Counted from the first letter of the stretch, positions 1,056 to 14,377 are shown. The stretch is DNA of 40,711 nucleotides from Antechinus flavipes (GCF_016432865.1 NC_067398.1:244652001-244692711), one strand, 5' to 3'. The notes: generated by a model from the letters alone, not told the origin. Made by a program: numbers and translations.

Positions 1056-1110
1056 AGCTTTGGGACTTTTATTGAAGTGTGTTTCCAGGCTGTGTGAACC
1101 CCCTTTTATT
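1030..1110. terminator. Convergent polyadenylation signals: AATAGA (+, 1030-1035); AATAAA (-, 1068-1073 and 1105-1110)
   Basis: The hexamers are read directly from the sequence. The minus-strand signals lie about 90 and 125 nt downstream of the PHETA-like stop codon. Confidence 0.55.
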
Positions 1111-1198: not shown

Positions 1199-1777
1199 TC
1201 ACCCAAATTCTGTGAGGTCCACTTGCCTCCTGGCAGCCCTGGACCTGGCAAGTGCCTGAATCTCTTCCCCAAAGCGTTGGTGCAACTCCGGGAAGCCAGA
1301 GGGGGCTGGAGAGCAGGGGAGGCTCAGAACTATCTCTTCCTGCGGTGGGGACCGGGGCTCCACTCCAGCCTCTTGGCACACTCTTTGGTACTGCTCCTGT
1401 AAGGGCTGCAGGAGCTCCCACAGCTGGCTCCATCCTGCCCAAACCAAGGCTTGAAGCCAATTATCGAAATCCTTCTTGGTCTCCGCTGCCAGTTTGTAGC
1501 ACCTACCACCTTCTGCGGAGGCCAGGATGGTAAAAGCATAGAGCCCACTGGTACTGGCTCGGGGCTCCACCCGGCAGTTGTCCAACAAGATGAGGCCCAG
1601 GGGGCTCCGATCCCCTTGGTGCTCCAGATAATAGAGGAGATTTCCACGGAGGATAAACCAGCGGCGTTGGTAGCTGGGATTGCGGGTCCCCTTCTTCAGC
1701 AAAATTCCTTCCTGATCTGGGGCCCGGCCCCCCGTTCCCCGAAAGTAGCTGAGCACAGGTTTTCGGTGCAGTTTCAT
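1199..1777 (-). CDS. Sesquipedalian/PHETA (FAM109/IPIP27)-like PH-domain endocytic adaptor, 192 aa, single coding exon
   Basis: The MKL N-terminus and PH domain (EGILLKKG..YQRRWFILRGNLLYY..PLGLILL..YKLAAE..W) resemble recalled PHETA1 (GFLYKKG..YHRRWFVLRGNMLFYF..PVGVIILEGC..YVLAAES). A helical segment follows, then the F&H motif FPELHQRFGEEI (PHETA1 FARLHECYGQEI). Start context is ctaccATG. A polypyrimidine tract with AG acceptor lies 11 nt upstream (exon starts at 1788), and AATAAA signals lie downstream. Confidence 0.9.
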   Translation of the reverse strand: MKLHRKPVLSYFRGTGGRAPDQEGILLKKGTRNPSYQRRWFILRGNLLYYLEHQGDRSPLGLILLDNCRVEPRASTSGLYAFTILASAEGGRCYKLAAETKKDFDNWLQALVWAGWSQLWELLQPLQEQYQRVCQEAGVEPRSPPQEEIVLSLPCSPAPSGFPELHQRFGEEIQALARSRAARRQVDLTEFG

Positions 1778-2169: not shown

Positions 2170-2199
2170 CTGAGAGCAGGGGGCTGGAGGGTCCCTCCA

Positions 2200-2960
2200 G
2201 GCTGGGACGGTGGGAACAGGTGCAGGGGCGGGGCGGTCGTTTCCCTATCTCTTGGTGGTTCACACCCCACCCCAGAAACCAGGAAATCCTCCCGGGGACC
2301 GGCCCCAGGCCAGGCCGAAGTACAAAAAGAGACTTCCTCCTGGGTCCTAGAGGGCGCTAGATTTTCAGGGGAAACTGGAGGTGGTTGAAGAATTAATGAG
2401 ATTTCCCCTAGGTTTTCCTTAAAGTGACAAAGTTGAAAAATGTTCCTTTCCTCACAATAAAGCTGGAAAGGGAGAGAGGCTGGTGGTTTTGCAAAAAGAA
2501 GAGCGGAACCCTGAGACCCCTTTACTTTCTGGTTCAACTTTAGGCAAGGGCAATGGGTTATGCCCTTTTCTCCCTGGCATTCCCATTTGTGCCCCATTCC
2601 TCTTTTTGTGTCCCTTCGCGGCACACAAGATTTCCGCCCTCAATCCTTCTCCGGCCCAATGTAGTTAGAAGGAAGAGAAGCTACTTCCGACCAGTTTGTC
2701 GCAACTTCCGCCCTCACTACAGTCTGTCCCTTCGCCTACGGAGAGTGATGTCAACCACATGGTTTCTAGGTGCTTATTTCCGCCCTCTTTCCCAACAGTC
2801 TTCCGAAGCGAGAGAAGTCACTTCCGGGTTTTCTGAGTCTCTTCCGGTTGGCTCCCTGGATGTAGCCTCGGCAATAGCGTTCTTTTTCTCCCCCGCCCCC
2901 TTCTCCCCTCTCCTCCTCTCCCCTCCCCGAGCCCCAGGTGAGGGCGCGCACGCGGAGTGA
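2200..2960. promoter_or_regulatory. CpG-rich bidirectional promoter (CD2BP2 / PHETA-like) with clustered ETS/GABP motifs; includes the non-coding exon 1 of CD2BP2
   Basis: ACTTCCG at 2683, 2704 and 2820, with further TTCCG cores at ~2778, ~2801 and ~2842. CCAAT at ~2656, GC boxes at ~2226-2237, and locally raised CpG density. A donor CAG|GTGAGG at 2937/2938 ends the non-coding exon 1. Confidence 0.75.
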
Positions 2961-3655
2961 GCCCCGAATTCCGCGGGGTTCCATCGACTCCCTGCTCATT
3001 TACATATTAAGAGGAGGAAGAAGGGGCGGGGGCGCTTGTAAGGGATGGACTGGGAGTTGAGGCGGGTTTGGGGTAGAGCTGATTTGAGGAGTGGGGCTCC
3101 CTACAATGGGCTCCGAATCCTGGAAGGGCCCTCGGGTTGGAATTGGGGTGGCAGGGTCGCGAGTGTGCGCGGCCAAGGGGAATCGCTGGGTCGAGACCGC
3201 TGCCCTCTCACCCCAAATGTAAGGGGACTCCGGGGATAGAAGACATACATCTTCTGGGAAAGGATGCAAGTCCCCGATATTGGGGCAGGAACTCCCCGCT
3301 GAGCAGAGCAGTGGGACCTTACTGGCAGTCCATGGGCATCCTTTCCCCTCCCCCCATCTCCCAAGTCAAAGGAGCTCCAGTCCCGGCCCCCTTCCTCTCC
3401 CCACCCCCATCAAGAGTTATGGCAGCTTCCTGGGGACTCAGATGTGTGCTCTTACCTCCTTCTCTCCCTTTCCTTATTTGATCACAGAGAGTAACACTCC
3501 CCGGGTCTGAGGAATAGTGTCCTGGAAGTGGGAAAGTGGATTCTGAATTCCCAAACCCCATTAAGTCCATCACGCTGTTTTAGGGCTCCCTGACCCTGGG
3601 GCTCCTTTTTGGTCAGCTCCTGGGAAGGATCTGATCCTACCCTGCAAGTCCCACC

Positions 3656-3727: not shown

Positions 3728-5735
3728 GTGAGGAGGTCAGAATGTGTGAATTTCCAGGACATAGAAGGGAGAGGATCTCTTCAAAAAGAAGGTGGGGGTC
3801 AGGCTGCTTGGGTTTCCAGGATGTGGAATAGAGAGGATCTCCCCAAAAAAAAGGTGGGGCAGGGTTAGAATGCCTTGAGTTCCCAAGTGAGTGGGTTGGA
3901 AGGGACTGAACTACACGGGACTAAATTGCATTTGGGTCCACTGCATCCAACCCTATTTTCTGCCTGTAGCTGGTGGATCCTGTGACAGGAGCAGGGGGAC
4001 CTGGGAGCCGGTTTAAAGGCAAGCATTCTTTGGACAGTGATGAAGAAGATGAGGAAGAGGATGGTTCTAGCAAGTATGTCATCCTAGCTTCAGAAGATGT
4101 GGAAGGTGAGGCCATGGCACCTAAGGGCTCTATACTCTTCTCACATCCTTCTCAGTCTCAGGCTGGATTCTTGAAAGTTGAAGGTAGATTCTTCCCAGAG
4201 GATATTTTCAATAAACATTTATTAAGTTTTGGTCTGTGCCTAGTATTGTGCCAAGATGTGATGGGGGAAGGCTGGAGGATAATATGTTAAGTAGGATCTA
4301 AGCGTTGCTTCCCTTTTTCTCGCCCAATTCTGGGTATCTGTTTATCCAGGTCAGGAGGCAGCCACACTCCCAAGTGAGGGTGGTGTGCGTATCACACCCT
4401 TCAACTTGCAGGAAGAAATGGAAGAGGGCCACTTTGATTCAGATGGCAACTACTTTCTGCACCGGGATGCCCAGATTCGGGACAGCTGGCTGGACAACAT
4501 AGACTGGGTTAGAGCCCCTAGGCCAGGAGACTTAGGTCCTGGCTGAGTGATATGCTTCATTTGTGAAATGAGTTAGAGACCAACAGAGAGACGGGGGTGC
4601 CTGGAGTGGGGACTGGGGCTAGGGAGCAGTATAATAACCTGTCCTATCCTATCTTAGGTGAAGATCCGGGAGCGCCCTCCAGGCCAGCCCCCTGCCTCAG
4701 ATTCGGAGGAAGACAGTCCTGGCCAGACACCACTGGGCCCTCAAGCCCTCTTAGAGGGTCTCTTGGAGATGTTGTTGCCAGGGGAGACAGTTGCTGGGGC
4801 ACTGAGGCGGCTAGGTGCCAGGAAGGGTGGTAATGGACCCCAGCGGCCAAATTCCCCACAACGATTAGACCGACTCTCAGGATTGGCTGACCAGATGGTT
4901 GCCCGGGGTAACCACGGAGTGTACCAGGAAACCAGGGAACGGCTAGCTGTGAGGCTGAAAGCGCTGGGGGGCCCCACACCCGGGCTTCCAGACACAGCTT
5001 CTCGTCCTGTTCTGGACATGTTTGCTGAAGAGGTTGGGGAGGGGGAGCTAGAGACTCCAACCCCAGCCCAAGGAGGAGGTGAGGGTTGAAGACTTTGGAA
5101 TTGTAGATTCCTTTCAGGGAAATGGAGACTTGAAAGGTTATAGAATCTGACAAGATATCAGAGGATGTGGGAACCATGTGTGTGTGGGGGGGTGCGAGGC
5201 AGAGCTAAATGGAAAAAGTATGGGACCTGTGGATAGATGGGATTTGACTTTGTATGGGGAGGGCGATGAAATGTGATGGGAATTATAAGGGGAGACAGGG
5301 ATAGATTATGTGTAGGGAGAAAACAGGTGGGGTAGAATGTACTTGGGCTCAGGGAACAGGGTAATGTACCTGAGAAGGCTTTCTCTGGTTGTCTTTCTAG
5401 AAGCAGCTGCCATGGGAGATGGCTTGGCTGATGTGATGTGGGAATACAAATGGGAAAACACAAATGATGCAGAACTCTATGGGCCCTTCACCAGTGCCCA
5501 GATGCAGGTAAGAATTCTCTCTCCATCCAGACCTTACCTACCTCTCCCCCTAATTTCTCTTCCCTGTATTAGAGATATTACCATCAATATCCCTACTTAC
5601 CTCTCTTCTTTCCTTTCTCCCTAGACCTGGGCAGATGAAGGCTATTTTCCAGATGGTGTTTATTGTCGGAAGTTGGATCCCCCTGAAGGCCAATTCTACA
5701 ACTCCAAACGTATAGATTTTGGTCTTTATTTCTGA
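3656..5735 (+). CDS. CD2BP2: CD2 antigen cytoplasmic tail-binding protein 2 (U5-52K, GYF domain), join(3656..3727,3970..4105,4350..4507,4658..5078,5401..5507,5625..5735), 334 aa
   Basis: Peptides [116 protein letters not shown] and [16 protein letters not shown] match recalled mammalian CD2BP2. All introns are GT-AG with consistent phases (0,1,0,1,0). Total is 1005 nt with a Kozak ccaccATG. Confidence 0.97.
3677..3880 (+). repeat. Three degenerate tandem copies (~62-75 bp) spanning the CD2BP2 exon/intron junction
   Basis: TTCCAGGA anchors at 3677, 3752 and 3814. Each copy carries GATCT(C)..CAAAAA(G/A)AAG|GTG, with GT at 3728, 3792 and 3854. Confidence 0.88.
3970..4105 (+). CDS. CD2BP2: CD2BP2 coding exon 2
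   Basis: Acceptor cctgtag| at 3969; LVDPV...SEDVE; donor G|GTGAG at 4105/4106. Confidence 0.95.
4350..4507 (+). CDS. CD2BP2: CD2BP2 coding exon 3
   Basis: Acceptor tttatccag| at 4349; (G)[11 protein letters not shown]...DNIDW; donor GTTAG at 4508. Confidence 0.95.
4658..5078 (+). CDS. CD2BP2: CD2BP2 coding exon 4
   Basis: Acceptor atcttag| at 4657; VKIRERPP...TPTPAQGG; donor G|GTGAG at 5078/5079. Confidence 0.95.
5401..5507 (+). CDS. CD2BP2: CD2BP2 coding exon 5 (start of GYF domain)
   Basis: Acceptor gtctttctag| at 5400; (E)[19 protein letters not shown]...AQMQ; donor CAG|GTAAG. Confidence 0.95.
5625..5735 (+). CDS. CD2BP2: CD2BP2 last coding exon (GYF core)
   Basis: Acceptor ctccctag| at 5624; [36 protein letters not shown] then TGA at 5733-5735. 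Confidence 0.96.
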
Positions 5736-13294: not shown

Positions 13295-14377
13295 ATGGCG
13301 ATGGTGTCCCCTCTGTCTCTCTTGTTGCTTCTCATCCTCTCTGAGTGCTTCTGGACCTCAATAGCCACCACTGACTCCCAGGCCCTGGATATGGTGTCTG
13401 TGTCAAGCTCTTTGGACCTGCACCCCTTGACCTCTCAGCCGCCCCTGGAAGCCGCATCCTTGCCAGCCTCAGACTCAGATACGACCCTCATGTCCTCTGC
13501 AGCCCTGGATGCCAGATTTTTGACGTCCTTGATGACAGAGGCCAGGGAGAGCACTCCTACTGCTGAAGTGGCGTCCTCTACCACTTTTGGTTCTGGGCTG
13601 ACCTCGGTGGATAAGAAAGACCTTAGTAGCACCCAGGAACTGACTACACATGTGGCTACTCTGTCTACTAGTATCAAGGCTGTAGTTCCTGCGGTAACGA
13701 CTCCCCCCGGACCTCCTCCCTTTAATGCCACTGGAGGGGAGGAAGGGAATACCACCCTAGTCACTAAAGAAACAACCCCCTCCCATGAGATTTCAACGGA
13801 TAAGATCACCTCCACATGTTTCCAGGGGTTCCAGACCACTTCCACGTCTTCCACTTCATTGGCCAGTGTGTCTCCTGCAAAGAAATTGCAACAGGGTGGC
13901 AATAACTCCGCGCTGGTGATTCTGGTTGTGGTGGTTGTGGCGGCAACTCTCTTGGTAGTCCTGTTCTTGCTGTGGCGTCGGCGGCAGAGGAGGAGGACCG
14001 GGGCTCTGATGCTTGTGGGAAATGGGAAACATAAAGGAGCTGGGGATGCTTGGGCTGGACCAGTTCAGGCTGTGGAAGAGCAGGCTGCGTCTGGGTCAGC
14101 AGCAGGTGAAGGGGACGCAATGAATGCTGAAGGCGAGGGGACTGGTCGTAGGCCCACACTCACCACCTTCTTTGGCAAGAGGAAGTCTAGACAGGGTTCT
14201 GTGATGATGGAGGACCTGGAGGCCGGGGCAGCCTCCAGTGACCTCAAAGTCGAGAGCGAACCCCTTGTGGAAAACATGGATGAGGCTGTAAAGCCCCCTA
14301 AAGTTGACGGCTTAACTGCTGATGAGTCAATAGCAGGAGATGGGAACTTGCCATCGAGCCCAGTGACCAATGTATGA
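13295..14377 (+). CDS. SPN: Leukosialin (sialophorin, CD43), 360 aa, single coding exon
   Basis: Signal peptide, Ser/Thr/Pro-rich mucin ectodomain and TM at aa ~206-227. The cytoplasmic tail RRRQRRRTGAL..DAWAGP..RRPTLTTFFGKRKSRQGS..MEDL..EPLV matches recalled CD43. It lies upstream of QPRT, as in human and mouse. Confidence 0.96.
   Translation: MAMVSPLSLLLLLILSECFWTSIATTDSQALDMVSVSSSLDLHPLTSQPPLEAASLPASDSDTTLMSSAALDARFLTSLMTEARESTPTAEVASSTTFGSGLTSVDKKDLSSTQELTTHVATLSTSIKAVVPAVTTPPGPPPFNATGGEEGNTTLVTKETTPSHEISTDKITSTCFQGFQTTSTSSTSLASVSPAKKLQQGGNNSALVILVVVVVAATLLVVLFLLWRRRQRRRTGALMLVGNGKHKGAGDAWAGPVQAVEEQAASGSAAGEGDAMNAEGEGTGRRPTLTTFFGKRKSRQGSVMMEDLEAGAASSDLKVESEPLVENMDEAVKPPKVDGLTADESIAGDGNLPSSPVTNV

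What the first reader, a model, noticed from the sequence alone, without database searches (positions are those of the whole stretch)
1199..1777. Intact third PHETA/sesquipedalian (IPIP27-family) gene where human has only a lncRNA (CD2BP2-DT)
Seen: a 192-aa uninterrupted ORF with Kozak context, a 5'UTR acceptor, AATAAA signals, a full PH domain, a helical segment and a C-terminal F&H motif (F162-PEL-H166-QRFGEEI, nt 1259-1294). Known: PHETA1/PHETA2 (FAM109A/B) use the F&H motif to bind the ASH-RhoGAP domains of the 5-phosphatases OCRL (Lowe syndrome) and INPP5B. Human has two such genes, at 12q24.12 and 22q13. PHETA1 sits next to SH2B3/ATXN2, whose ohnologues SH2B1/ATXN2L are at 16p11.2, and CORO1C/CORO1A, ATP2A2/ATP2A1 and TAOK3/TAOK2 show the same pairing. 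Inference: this is a 2R ohnologue (a PHETA3) retained here and lost or decayed into the divergent lncRNA in humans. It would be an uncharacterised OCRL adaptor.
Basis: partly seen in the sequence, partly recalled or inferred. Interest (0 to 1): 0.85.

Follow-up and report, generated by a model that had tools for sequence, protein, structure and literature searches.

The report
Third PHETA adaptor gene beside CD2BP2
This marsupial window holds an intact, selectively constrained gene for a third member of the PHETA/sesquipedalian family of OCRL-binding endocytic adaptors. It is an ancient vertebrate gene, the true counterpart of zebrafish 'pheta2', that most mammals keep, that is broken in monkeys and apes, and that has no annotated protein in human or mouse.

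Summary
A 192-aa ORF (1199-1777, minus strand) encodes a PH domain, a long helix and a C-terminal F&H motif. A conserved 5'UTR intron and two AATAAA signals flank it.

It is not unique to marsupials. Databases already list it as 'sesquipedalian-1-like' in marsupials, monotremes and many placentals. Colobine monkeys, bonobo and a mole-rat have truncated forms, and no human, mouse or rat protein was found. No paper describes it.

It lies head-to-head with CD2BP2 and next to TBC1D10B or MYLPF in koala, platypus, musk deer, Anolis, bowfin, a cyprinid and a shark. The tree puts all of these in one starred clade, separate from PHETA1 and fish pheta1. A recent copy of PHETA1 is rejected (AU p = 2e-8).

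The published zebrafish pheta2 guide-RNA target maps into the cyprinid CD2BP2-linked gene. Zebrafish 'pheta2' is therefore this gene's orthologue, not human PHETA2's.

Selection is purifying: dN/dS is about 0.2 against koala (p = 1.5e-8).

'2R' is consistent but not proven, human decay is only inferred, and 'uncharacterised' overlooks the zebrafish knockout. OCRL binding is inferred, not shown.

The parts
1199..1777 (-). Complete coding sequence (192 aa plus TGA) of the CD2BP2-linked PHETA/sesquipedalian paralogue, in a single coding exon
   Evidence: ORF list and translation. 98% identical to Sminthopsis 'sesquipedalian-1-like' and 88% to koala. dN/dS against koala is 0.21-0.25.
1439..1714 (-). 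PH domain (residues 22-113)
   Evidence: Pfam PF00169, E = 1.2e-16. PDB sequence matches to cytohesin/GRP1 and PEPP1 PH domains. The AF2 model has seven strands plus helix 101-114, pLDDT 82-95. Regional dN/dS is 0.18.
1367..1429 (-). Long helix after the PH domain (residues 117-137), the 'coiled-coil' segment of the family
   Evidence: AF2 helix H117-137. No amino-acid change between the window species and koala, with dS = 0.34.
1259..1297 (-). 13-residue F&H motif (G161-I173): F at position 2, H at position 6, F at position 9
   Evidence: Translation. F162 and L165 invariant, H166 and G170 at least 90% conserved, in 56 sequences. Lies in AF2 helix 162-182. Motif rules come from PMC6743453.
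1789..2169 (-). 5'UTR intron (381 nt): donor GT at 2169-2168, acceptor AG at 1790-1789
   Evidence: Donor CAG|GTAGGC and acceptor TTCTCAG|G are conserved with koala. Koala isoform P0003 reads ...LLSG|LATMKLH across this junction. The intron is only 72% identical to koala with 124 gap columns, against 88.5% and no gaps in the CDS.
2170..2420 (-). Upstream non-coding exon sequence (5'UTR). Its upstream limit was not determined.
   Evidence: 84% identical to koala. A 13-nt indel relative to koala shifts the frame, so the N-terminal extension annotated in koala is not conserved as protein.
1068..1110 (-). Two AATAAA polyadenylation signals (1110-1105 and 1073-1068), 89 and 126 nt after the stop codon
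   Evidence: Pattern scan and sequence.
2600..3200 (.). CpG-rich region between the two divergent genes, a likely shared bidirectional promoter with CD2BP2
   Evidence: CpG observed/expected 0.79-0.87 and GC 0.52-0.63 in 2601-3200, against below 0.5 on either side. Promoter function is inferred, not tested.
5337..5624 (+). Open reading frame holding the GYF-domain exon of the divergent neighbour CD2BP2 (synteny anchor)
   Evidence: Pfam GYF, E = 5.6e-5. The same GYF gene lies head-to-head with the PH gene in koala, platypus, Gracilinanus, Moschus, Amia and Garra.

Best explanation
This is the marsupial copy of a third, ancient vertebrate member of the PHETA/sesquipedalian (Ses/IPIP27) family. 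It is the lineage that sits head-to-head with CD2BP2 in the CD2BP2-TBC1D10B-MYLPF neighbourhood.

It is a functional protein-coding gene with a non-coding 5' exon, a 381-nt intron and one coding exon. The 192-aa product has an N-terminal PH domain, a conserved helix, a short disordered linker and a C-terminal amphipathic helix carrying an F&H motif.

By inference from PHETA1/2 and APPL1, that helix docks on the ASH-RhoGAP-like module of the 5-phosphatases OCRL and INPP5B. The PH domain and helix would place the complex on endocytic or recycling membranes. The protein lacks the PPPxPPRR PACSIN2 site of PHETA1.

Its fish orthologue is the gene studied as zebrafish 'pheta2'. The lineage split from the PHETA1/pheta1 lineage before the gnathostome radiation, which fits a 2R origin. 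It evolved fast on the mammalian stem, where it lost about 60-90 linker residues. It was then disabled in catarrhine primates and is missing from the annotated proteins of human, mouse and rat.
For: Shown:
- ORF, PH domain and motif.
- The best reviewed structural matches over the whole length are Sesquipedalian-1, then Sesquipedalian-2.
- Intact orthologues occur in 5 marsupial, 2 monotreme and more than 20 placental clusters, all carrying the F-x-E-L-H motif.
- Microsynteny: GYF(-)/PH(+)/RabGAP-TBC(-) in koala, platypus, Gracilinanus and Moschus. PH/TBC in Anolis. GYF/PH in Amia. GYF/PH/mylpf in Garra. PH/mylpf in Salmo. PH beside a faint EF-hand gene in a shark.
- Careful ML tree: the CD2BP2-linked group has 100/98 support and the PHETA1/pheta1 group 100/100.
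- AU test rejects a clade with mammalian PHETA1, p = 1.9e-8.
- The zebrafish pheta2 gRNA target matches the Garra CD2BP2-linked gene with 2 mismatches, 0 expected by chance. The pheta1 gRNA matches the start of the Amia group-B gene.
- Ates et al. found no synteny between zebrafish pheta2 and human PHETA1/2.
- Purifying selection: dN 0.069, dS 0.28-0.34, omega 0.21-0.25. Differences by codon position are 11/17/38, binomial p = 1.5e-8. The CDS has no indels, whereas the intron is indel-rich.
- Constraint is regional: PH 0.18, helix 0, linker about 1, F&H plus tail 0.2.

Inferred: OCRL/INPP5B binding, from the motif rules F2, H6 and bulky hydrophobic 9 (PMC6743453).
Against: - No expression or protein evidence for this species could be obtained.
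- OCRL binding is untested. The window species and Sminthopsis carry Pro at motif position 3, where every other orthologue has Gln. This might weaken the helix start.
- pLDDT of the motif helix is only 67-73.
- The mammalian clade sits on a long stem branch (0.86). Holding it together with all of group B is not formally rejected (p-AU 0.053), so its place in the CD2BP2-linked group rests on synteny as much as on the tree.
- Within that group, mammals, Anolis, frogs and sharks cluster apart from coelacanth, lungfish and ray-finned fish. This departs from the species tree and probably reflects rate differences.
- PHETA2 proteins were not in the tree.
Confidence: 0.8

Rival explanations
1. A functional gene of the same origin whose mammalian form no longer acts as an OCRL/INPP5B adaptor. 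After fast evolution on the mammalian stem and loss of most of the linker, it may have taken on another role. The F&H-like helix would then be kept for a different partner or for folding back on the PH domain.
For: Long mammalian stem branch (0.86 changes per column). 192-214 aa in mammals against 250-283 aa in fish, shark and salamander, with loss of the conserved S-P-K-L-W-P-K-R linker block. Divergent C-terminal tails in placentals. Pro at motif position 3 in dasyurids. Repeated loss in primates and some rodents suggests the gene is dispensable.
Against: F, L, H and G of the motif stay invariant or nearly so through the whole clade, mammals included. The motif region has dN/dS of 0.2. It meets the published requirements at positions 2, 6 and 9.
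Confidence: 0.13
2. The mammalian gene and the fish CD2BP2-linked gene are not one-to-one orthologues. They would be two old paralogues that once lay side by side at this locus and were lost reciprocally, one kept by sharks, amphibians and amniotes, the other by coelacanth, lungfish and ray-finned fish.
For: Inside the group the tree separates these two sets (90/92 and 87/80 support; also seen in the quick tree), which is not the species tree.
Against: Both sets occupy the same slot and orientation next to CD2BP2. No fetched locus holds two copies. Support for the split is unstarred. The set with mammals, frogs and Anolis is made of long branches (0.86-1.3), which attract one another.
Confidence: 0.05
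3. A recent marsupial duplicate or retrocopy of PHETA1 or PHETA2 that happened to land beside CD2BP2.
For: The coding sequence is intronless, as a retrocopy's would be. Databases call it 'sesquipedalian-1-like'.
Against: The same gene sits in the same slot in monotremes, placentals, lizard, bowfin, cyprinid and shark. AU p = 1.9e-8 rejects a clade with mammalian PHETA1. Only 24-28% identity to reviewed Ses1/Ses2 in the structural alignment. It has its own spliced 5'UTR.
Confidence: 0.01
4. A decaying, non-coding remnant (as proposed for the human locus) whose open frame survives by chance.
For: Primate copies are truncated. The human transcript at this position is treated as a lncRNA with weak coding potential (PMC12005790).
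Against: The frame is open and indel-free across marsupials and monotremes. dN/dS is 0.2 with p = 1.5e-8, and the domain-wise pattern of constraint matches the protein's architecture.
Confidence: 0.01

Closest known systems
Zebrafish Pheta2 (zgc:153733; Ates et al. 2020, PMC7272357)
   Same: Same orthologous lineage by synteny (cd2bp2 / PH gene / mylpf in a cyprinid), by tree (group A) and by the published gRNA target mapping into that gene. Shares the PH domain, helix and F&H motif, and lacks PPPxPPRR.
   Different: The fish proteins in this group are 250-295 aa, with a long linker and a conserved S-P-K-L-W-P-K-R block that the 192-aa marsupial protein lacks. The zebrafish gene was named as if it were the counterpart of human PHETA2, which the evidence here contradicts.
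PHETA1 / Sesquipedalian-1 / IPIP27A / FAM109A
   Same: Same architecture and the best whole-length structural match. The F&H motif sits in the same position. Probably its ohnologue: 12q carries MYL2-..-CUX2-PHETA1-SH2B3-ATXN2 and 16p carries ATXN2L-TUFM-SH2B1-ATP2A1 (PMC12898128), and MYLPF is a neighbour of this gene in fish.
   Different: A separate clade (100/100 against 100/98). About 27-28% identity. No PPPxPPRR PACSIN2 site. Shorter linker. Linked to CD2BP2, not SH2B3.
PHETA2 / Sesquipedalian-2 / IPIP27B / FAM109B
   Same: PH domain plus F&H motif, and lacks the PACSIN2 motif. Whole-length structural match.
   Different: 24-25% identity and a different locus (22q13 in human, per PMC7272357). 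PHETA2 sequences could not be placed in the tree here.
APPL1 (and Frabin/FGD4): other F&H-motif partners of OCRL
   Same: Share only the short helical F&H peptide rules: F at position 2 and H at position 6 (PMC6743453).
   Different: Unrelated domain architecture (BAR-PH-PTB and DH-PH-FYVE), so not homologous proteins.
Human lncRNA CD2BP2-DT
   Same: Same genomic slot (divergent from CD2BP2) according to its name and the literature. Bonobo has a 175-aa truncated homologue annotated as an uncharacterised LOC protein.
   Different: Treated as a 1215-nt non-coding RNA with weak coding potential (PMC12005790). Homology of the human transcript to this gene was not tested here.

Membership tests
PHETA / sesquipedalian (Ses, IPIP27) family | N-terminal PH domain that starts within about 20 residues of an M-K-L/I-x-x-K/R N-terminus | tested here: met
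   Pfam PH, E = 1.2e-16, residues 22-113. The N-terminus MKLHRK aligns with MKLNER/MKLHEK of family members, and M1 and K2 are invariant.
PHETA / sesquipedalian (Ses, IPIP27) family | Helical ('coiled-coil') segment directly after the PH domain | tested here: met
   AF2 helix 117-137. L126 is invariant in 22 sequences and at least 90% conserved in 56. No amino-acid change against koala.
PHETA / sesquipedalian (Ses, IPIP27) family | C-terminal 13-residue helical F&H motif: F at position 2, H at position 6, bulky hydrophobic at position 9 | tested here: met
   F162, H166 and F169. Conservation. Predicted helix 162-182. Rules from PMC6743453. Caveat: Pro at position 3 in dasyurids.
PHETA / sesquipedalian (Ses, IPIP27) family | F&H-dependent binding to the ASH-RhoGAP-like module of OCRL/INPP5B | not testable with these tools
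   Needs pull-down, ITC or co-IP with F162A/H166A controls.
PHETA / sesquipedalian (Ses, IPIP27) family | Groups with family members, within vertebrates, in a tree rooted on invertebrate homologues | tested here: met
   Vertebrate clade 100/98, with hemichordate, sponge and mite homologues as outgroup. Top Foldseek hits are Ses1 and Ses2.
PHETA1 subtype | PPPxPPRR PACSIN2-binding motif in the linker; linkage to SH2B3 | tested here: not met
   No such motif in the 192 aa, whereas fish pheta1 (Esox) has PPPVPPRRR. The neighbours are CD2BP2 and TBC1D10B. The clade with mammalian PHETA1 is rejected, p = 1.9e-8.
CD2BP2-linked PHETA lineage (includes zebrafish 'pheta2') | Head-to-head with the GYF-domain gene CD2BP2, with TBC1D10B and/or MYLPF on the other side | tested here: met
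   Window: the GYF exon at 5337-5624 (+) is divergent from the ORF. Koala, platypus, Gracilinanus, Moschus, Anolis, Amia, Garra, Salmo and Heterodontus.
CD2BP2-linked PHETA lineage (includes zebrafish 'pheta2') | Monophyly with the fish, amphibian, lizard and shark genes of that locus | tested here: met
   100/98 starred clade of 34 rows. The broader alternative (mammals with all of group B) is only borderline, p-AU 0.053.
2R ohnologue of PHETA1 | Duplication after the split from invertebrates and before the gnathostome radiation | tested here: inconclusive
   Sharks fall inside the CD2BP2-linked clade and invertebrates fall outside both clades. No shark member of the PHETA1 group was sampled. 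Hagfish and lamprey join the CD2BP2-linked clade only weakly (92/75).
2R ohnologue of PHETA1 | Lies in paralogous chromosome blocks with other ohnologue pairs | tested here: inconclusive
   MYLPF lies beside this gene in fish. MYL2, SH2B3 and ATXN2 lie beside PHETA1 on 12q, and SH2B1, ATXN2L and ATP2A1 on 16p, from published gene orders. No genome-wide paralogon analysis was run. PHETA2's place is unknown.

The most novel reading that the evidence does not exclude
Vertebrates began with a CD2BP2-linked PHETA adaptor distinct from PHETA1/2. Most mammals still use it as a third OCRL/INPP5B partner, with its own C-terminal tail and without PACSIN2 coupling. Human (as CD2BP2-DT) and mouse lost it independently. 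The two main model species would then under-represent the OCRL adaptor set. The zebrafish pheta1/pheta2 double knockout would model loss of PHETA1 plus this gene rather than PHETA1 plus PHETA2. The cancer-studied lncRNA CD2BP2-DT would be a unitary pseudogene that may still encode an F&H-bearing fragment like the bonobo 175-aa product.
Probability: 0.35. Interest if true: 0.7.

Novelty: new member of a known kind. Interest (0 to 1): 0.55.

Why it matters
PHETA1/2 are the adaptors that link OCRL, the Lowe syndrome and Dent-2 phosphatase, to endocytic recycling. All functional work assumes two vertebrate genes. This finding changes three things.

- **A third lineage exists.** It is old and intact in most mammals, but absent from the human and mouse protein sets. 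That absence probably explains why no paper mentions it.
- **Zebrafish 'pheta2' is misassigned.** It belongs to this lineage rather than to PHETA2. This changes how the zebrafish single and double knockouts map onto human PHETA1/2 deficiency.
- **CD2BP2-DT has a likely origin.** The human lncRNA would be the remnant of a protein-coding gene.

It also offers dog, pig, ruminants or marsupial cells as systems where a third OCRL adaptor can be tested. The gene itself is an ordinary family member already predicted by annotation pipelines, so this is a correction and extension of a known family, not a new kind of system.

Tried and rejected
- **PHETA2 for the tree.** The exhaustive search listed only the best 150 representatives, none of them PHETA2. 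The profile search listed 120 rows, almost all teleosts. PHETA2 enters only through the Swiss-Prot fold search.
- **AU test of mammals plus all of group B.** It gave p = 0.053, so it does not reject that arrangement. Only the recent-copy version was rejected.
- **Missing DNA.** The Rhinatrema, Gracilinanus and Heterodontus loci returned no DNA because the files were too large. For Rhinatrema and gar (L001) no neighbour fell within 10 kb, so they say nothing about synteny.
- **Literature.** 'PHETA3' and 'sesquipedalian-1-like' returned no papers.
- **Earlier scan notes.** There is nothing on PHETA or OCRL elsewhere in this genome.
- **Upstream extension.** The koala-style N-terminal extension (288-aa isoform) is not conserved as protein, because a 13-nt indel shifts the frame in the window.
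- **Saturation.** YN00 failed on the platypus pairs and the NG86 regional estimates against Moschus failed for the linker and tail, so only the window-koala pair is used for regional dN/dS.

Full report
**1. Observation**

The minus strand carries an uninterrupted ORF from the ATG at 1777 to the TGA at 1199, 192 codons long.
- Pfam scores residues 22-113 as a PH domain (E = 1.2e-16, 61.5 bits against a 25.1-bit cut-off). PDB sequence matches are PH domains of cytohesins, GRP1 and PEPP1.
- An AlphaFold2 model built on a 56-sequence alignment has mean pLDDT 77.6 and pTM 0.63. It shows the seven-strand PH sandwich with its C-terminal helix, a second long helix (117-137), a disordered linker (138-160) and a final helix (162-182).
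- That last helix holds G161-F162-P-E-L-H166-Q-R-F169-G-E-E-I173, at nt 1259-1297.
- The published definition of the OCRL-binding F&H motif is a 13-residue helical peptide. [quoted passage not shown] The window protein meets all three.
- F162 and L165 are invariant, and H166 and G170 are at least 90% conserved, over 56 family members.
- The start context is ACCATGA. Two AATAAA signals follow the stop at 1110-1105 and 1073-1068.
- A splice acceptor (AG at 1790-1789) and an upstream donor (CAG|GTAGGC, exon end 2170) are conserved with koala. A koala isoform reads straight across this junction.

**2. The gene is real and constrained**

Against the koala orthologue (L007) there are 66 nucleotide differences, distributed 11/17/38 over the three codon positions, and no indels.
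- dN is 0.069, dS is 0.28-0.34, and omega is 0.21-0.25. The shortage of non-synonymous change has binomial p = 1.5e-8.
- The 381-nt intron just upstream is only 72% identical, with 124 gap columns.
- Constraint follows the architecture: PH domain 0.18; helix with no replacement at dS 0.34; linker about 1; F&H helix plus tail 0.2.
- Comparisons with platypus and musk deer give 0.18-0.31 but are near saturation.

**3. Distribution**

The word-indexed search returned 41 clusters.
- Intact proteins of 181-214 aa named 'sesquipedalian-1-like' occur in Sminthopsis (98% identity), koala, Gracilinanus, bilby, platypus and echidna.
- They also occur in many placentals: shrew, moles, hyena, sea lions, canids, lion, hippopotamus, musk deer, armadillo, squirrel, marmot, kangaroo rat, beaver and tree shrew. 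All carry F-x-E-L-H.
- Colobine monkeys have 125-149-aa products that leave the frame after about residue 90.
- Bonobo has a 175-aa 'uncharacterized protein' that lacks the first three PH strands but keeps the F&H motif.
- A mole-rat product stops at 105 aa.
- No human, mouse or rat protein appeared.

So the gene is not a marsupial peculiarity. It is a widespread mammalian gene that was disabled in some lineages. No paper mentions 'PHETA3' or 'sesquipedalian-1-like'. The human transcript CD2BP2-DT is treated as a 1215-nt lncRNA with weak coding potential (PMC12005790). I did not examine human DNA, so decay in human is inferred.

**4. Locus**

In the window the ORF is divergent from a plus-strand gene whose exon at 5337-5624 encodes a GYF domain, the mark of CD2BP2. 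A CpG-rich stretch lies between them. The neighbours found elsewhere are:

| Species | Arrangement |
|---|---|
| Koala | GYF(-) / PH(+) / RabGAP-TBC(-) |
| Platypus | GYF(-) / PH(+) / RabGAP-TBC(-) |
| Gracilinanus | GYF(-) / PH(+) / RabGAP-TBC(-) |
| Musk deer | GYF(-) / PH(+) / RabGAP-TBC(-) |
| Anolis | PH gene next to the TBC gene |
| Bowfin | Head-to-head with the GYF gene |
| Garra rufa (cyprinid) | GYF(-) / PH(+) / 169-aa EF-hand gene |
| Salmo trutta | PH protein annotated as an isoform of the myosin light chain gene |
| Horn shark | EF-hand gene (faint hits) is the neighbour |

The Garra EF-hand gene has an exon that matches skeletal-muscle myosin regulatory light chain best (E = 4e-15). 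The CD2BP2 / PH gene / TBC1D10B / MYLPF neighbourhood is therefore at least as old as bony vertebrates and probably as old as jawed vertebrates.

**5. Phylogeny**

A careful ML tree of 58 sequences (LG+C20) was rooted on invertebrate homologues, among them hemichordate, sponge and mite sequences. It gives:
- a vertebrate clade (100/98);
- a clade of tetrapod PHETA1 plus fish 'sesquipedalian-1', including the bowfin copy (100/100);
- a clade of 34 sequences that contains every CD2BP2-linked gene (100/98): the query, other mammals, Anolis, frogs, a caecilian, a salamander, three shark-type sequences, coelacanth, lungfish, bichir, sturgeon, gar, bowfin and both teleost duplicates.

Forcing the mammalian genes together with mammalian PHETA1 costs 51.5 log-likelihood units (p-AU = 1.9e-8). 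A recent copy is excluded.

Forcing them together with the whole PHETA1/pheta1 clade costs 18.9 units and is only borderline (p = 0.053). The mammalian stem is long (0.86). Assignment to the CD2BP2-linked lineage therefore rests on synteny and the tree together.

The reviewed proteins most similar in predicted structure are Ses1 (27-28% identity) and Ses2 (24-25%) over the whole length.

**6. Link to zebrafish**

Ates et al. (PMC7272357) named two zebrafish genes.
- pheta1 is syntenic with sh2b3.

Their pheta2 guide-RNA target matches the Garra CD2BP2-linked gene at L006 12129-12148 with 2 mismatches (0 expected by chance). It falls in the codons for S-M-I-V-R-D of that protein. Their pheta1 target matches the start of the bowfin group-B gene with 3 mismatches.

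Zebrafish 'pheta2' is therefore the orthologue of the window's gene, not of human PHETA2. The lineage already has some functional data. Maternal-zygotic pheta2 mutants are viable. pheta2 loss affects some craniofacial measures. Impairing both genes disrupts renal endocytosis and ciliogenesis.

**7. Origin**

The split between the two lineages postdates the invertebrate outgroups and predates sharks. Cyclostome sequences attach only weakly (92/75).

Published gene orders put MYL2, CUX2, PHETA1, SH2B3 and ATXN2 together on 12q, and ATXN2L, TUFM, SH2B1 and ATP2A1 on 16p (PMC12898128). I find MYLPF next to this gene in fish. The pairs MYL2/MYLPF, SH2B3/SH2B1 and ATXN2/ATXN2L make a block duplication the simplest account, which fits 2R.

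It is not proven. No paralogon analysis was run. That same paper argues for a later ATXN2L origin. PHETA2's position is unknown. If PHETA2 is a later copy of PHETA1, this gene is the second ancient lineage rather than the third.

**8. Mechanism (inferred)**

The PH domain and helix would target endocytic membranes, and the F&H helix would dock on the ASH-RhoGAP-like module of OCRL and INPP5B, as for PHETA1/2 and APPL1.

Differences from PHETA1 and from the fish orthologues:
- There is no PACSIN2 motif.
- The linker is very short. The S-P-K-L-W-P-K-R block conserved in fish, shark and salamander copies is absent.
- Dasyurids carry Pro at motif position 3.

I put identity and coding function at about 0.9 and OCRL binding at about 0.7.

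**9. Verdict**

This is a correct observation and a largely correct interpretation. The gene is a new, so far undescribed-in-print member of a known family, already predicted by annotation pipelines.

The added value is threefold: the orthology with zebrafish pheta2, the conserved CD2BP2 linkage, and the likely pseudogene origin of CD2BP2-DT. Interest is moderate.

Noticed in passing
window 13295-14377 (+) and 34351-37453 (+): A 360-aa single-exon ORF has a signal peptide, a Ser/Thr/Pro-rich ectodomain, one transmembrane helix and an RRRQRRRTGAL...RRPTLTTFFGKRKSRQGS tail. From memory this looks like leukosialin (SPN/CD43). QPRT exons follow it (Pfam QRPTase_N/C). CD2BP2 would then be the direct neighbour of SPN-QPRT here. 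From memory, in human these flank opposite ends of the recurrent 16p11.2 deletion interval, which would imply a rearrangement between the lineages.
   Followed up: partly
alignment A1, last 5-7 residues; window 1202-1222 (-): Most CD2BP2-linked family members end in L-I/V-D-L/F-G/S (for example ...DLIDLG). This tail is absent from the PHETA1/pheta1 group and replaced in placentals. The window protein has V-D-L-T-E-F-G. It resembles a clathrin-box-like L-I-D-L-x (recalled, untested).
   Followed up: no
alignment A1 columns about 275-295: A conserved K/R-S-P-K-L-W-P-K-R block in the linker of fish, coelacanth, shark and salamander copies is missing in mammals, Anolis and frogs. Those proteins are 60-90 residues shorter and sit on long branches. 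The block's function is unknown.
   Followed up: no
window 1289-1291 (-), codon 163: The window species and Sminthopsis have Pro at position 3 of the F&H motif (F-P-E-L-H). Every other orthologue listed has Gln, with Arg or Leu in two cases.
   Followed up: no
L002 (Salmo trutta); P0223: The public annotation treats the PH protein as 'isoform X1' of the skeletal myosin regulatory light chain 2 gene, so two adjacent genes are merged in one gene model.
   Followed up: partly
L004/L005 (Amia): The bowfin PHETA1-type gene lies next to a 5-phosphatase gene with a SKICH domain (INPP5J/K-like). An adaptor for 5-phosphatases thus sits beside a 5-phosphatase gene. This may be coincidence or a trace of 22q/17p paralogy.
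   Followed up: no
window 26943-27080: A run of 138 N (assembly gap or masked). It was left untouched.
   Followed up: no
window 2300-2315 (-), alignment A3 columns 480-492: A 13-nt insertion relative to koala in the upstream exon shifts the frame. The long N-terminal extension annotated for a koala isoform (288 aa) cannot be conserved protein.
   Followed up: yes
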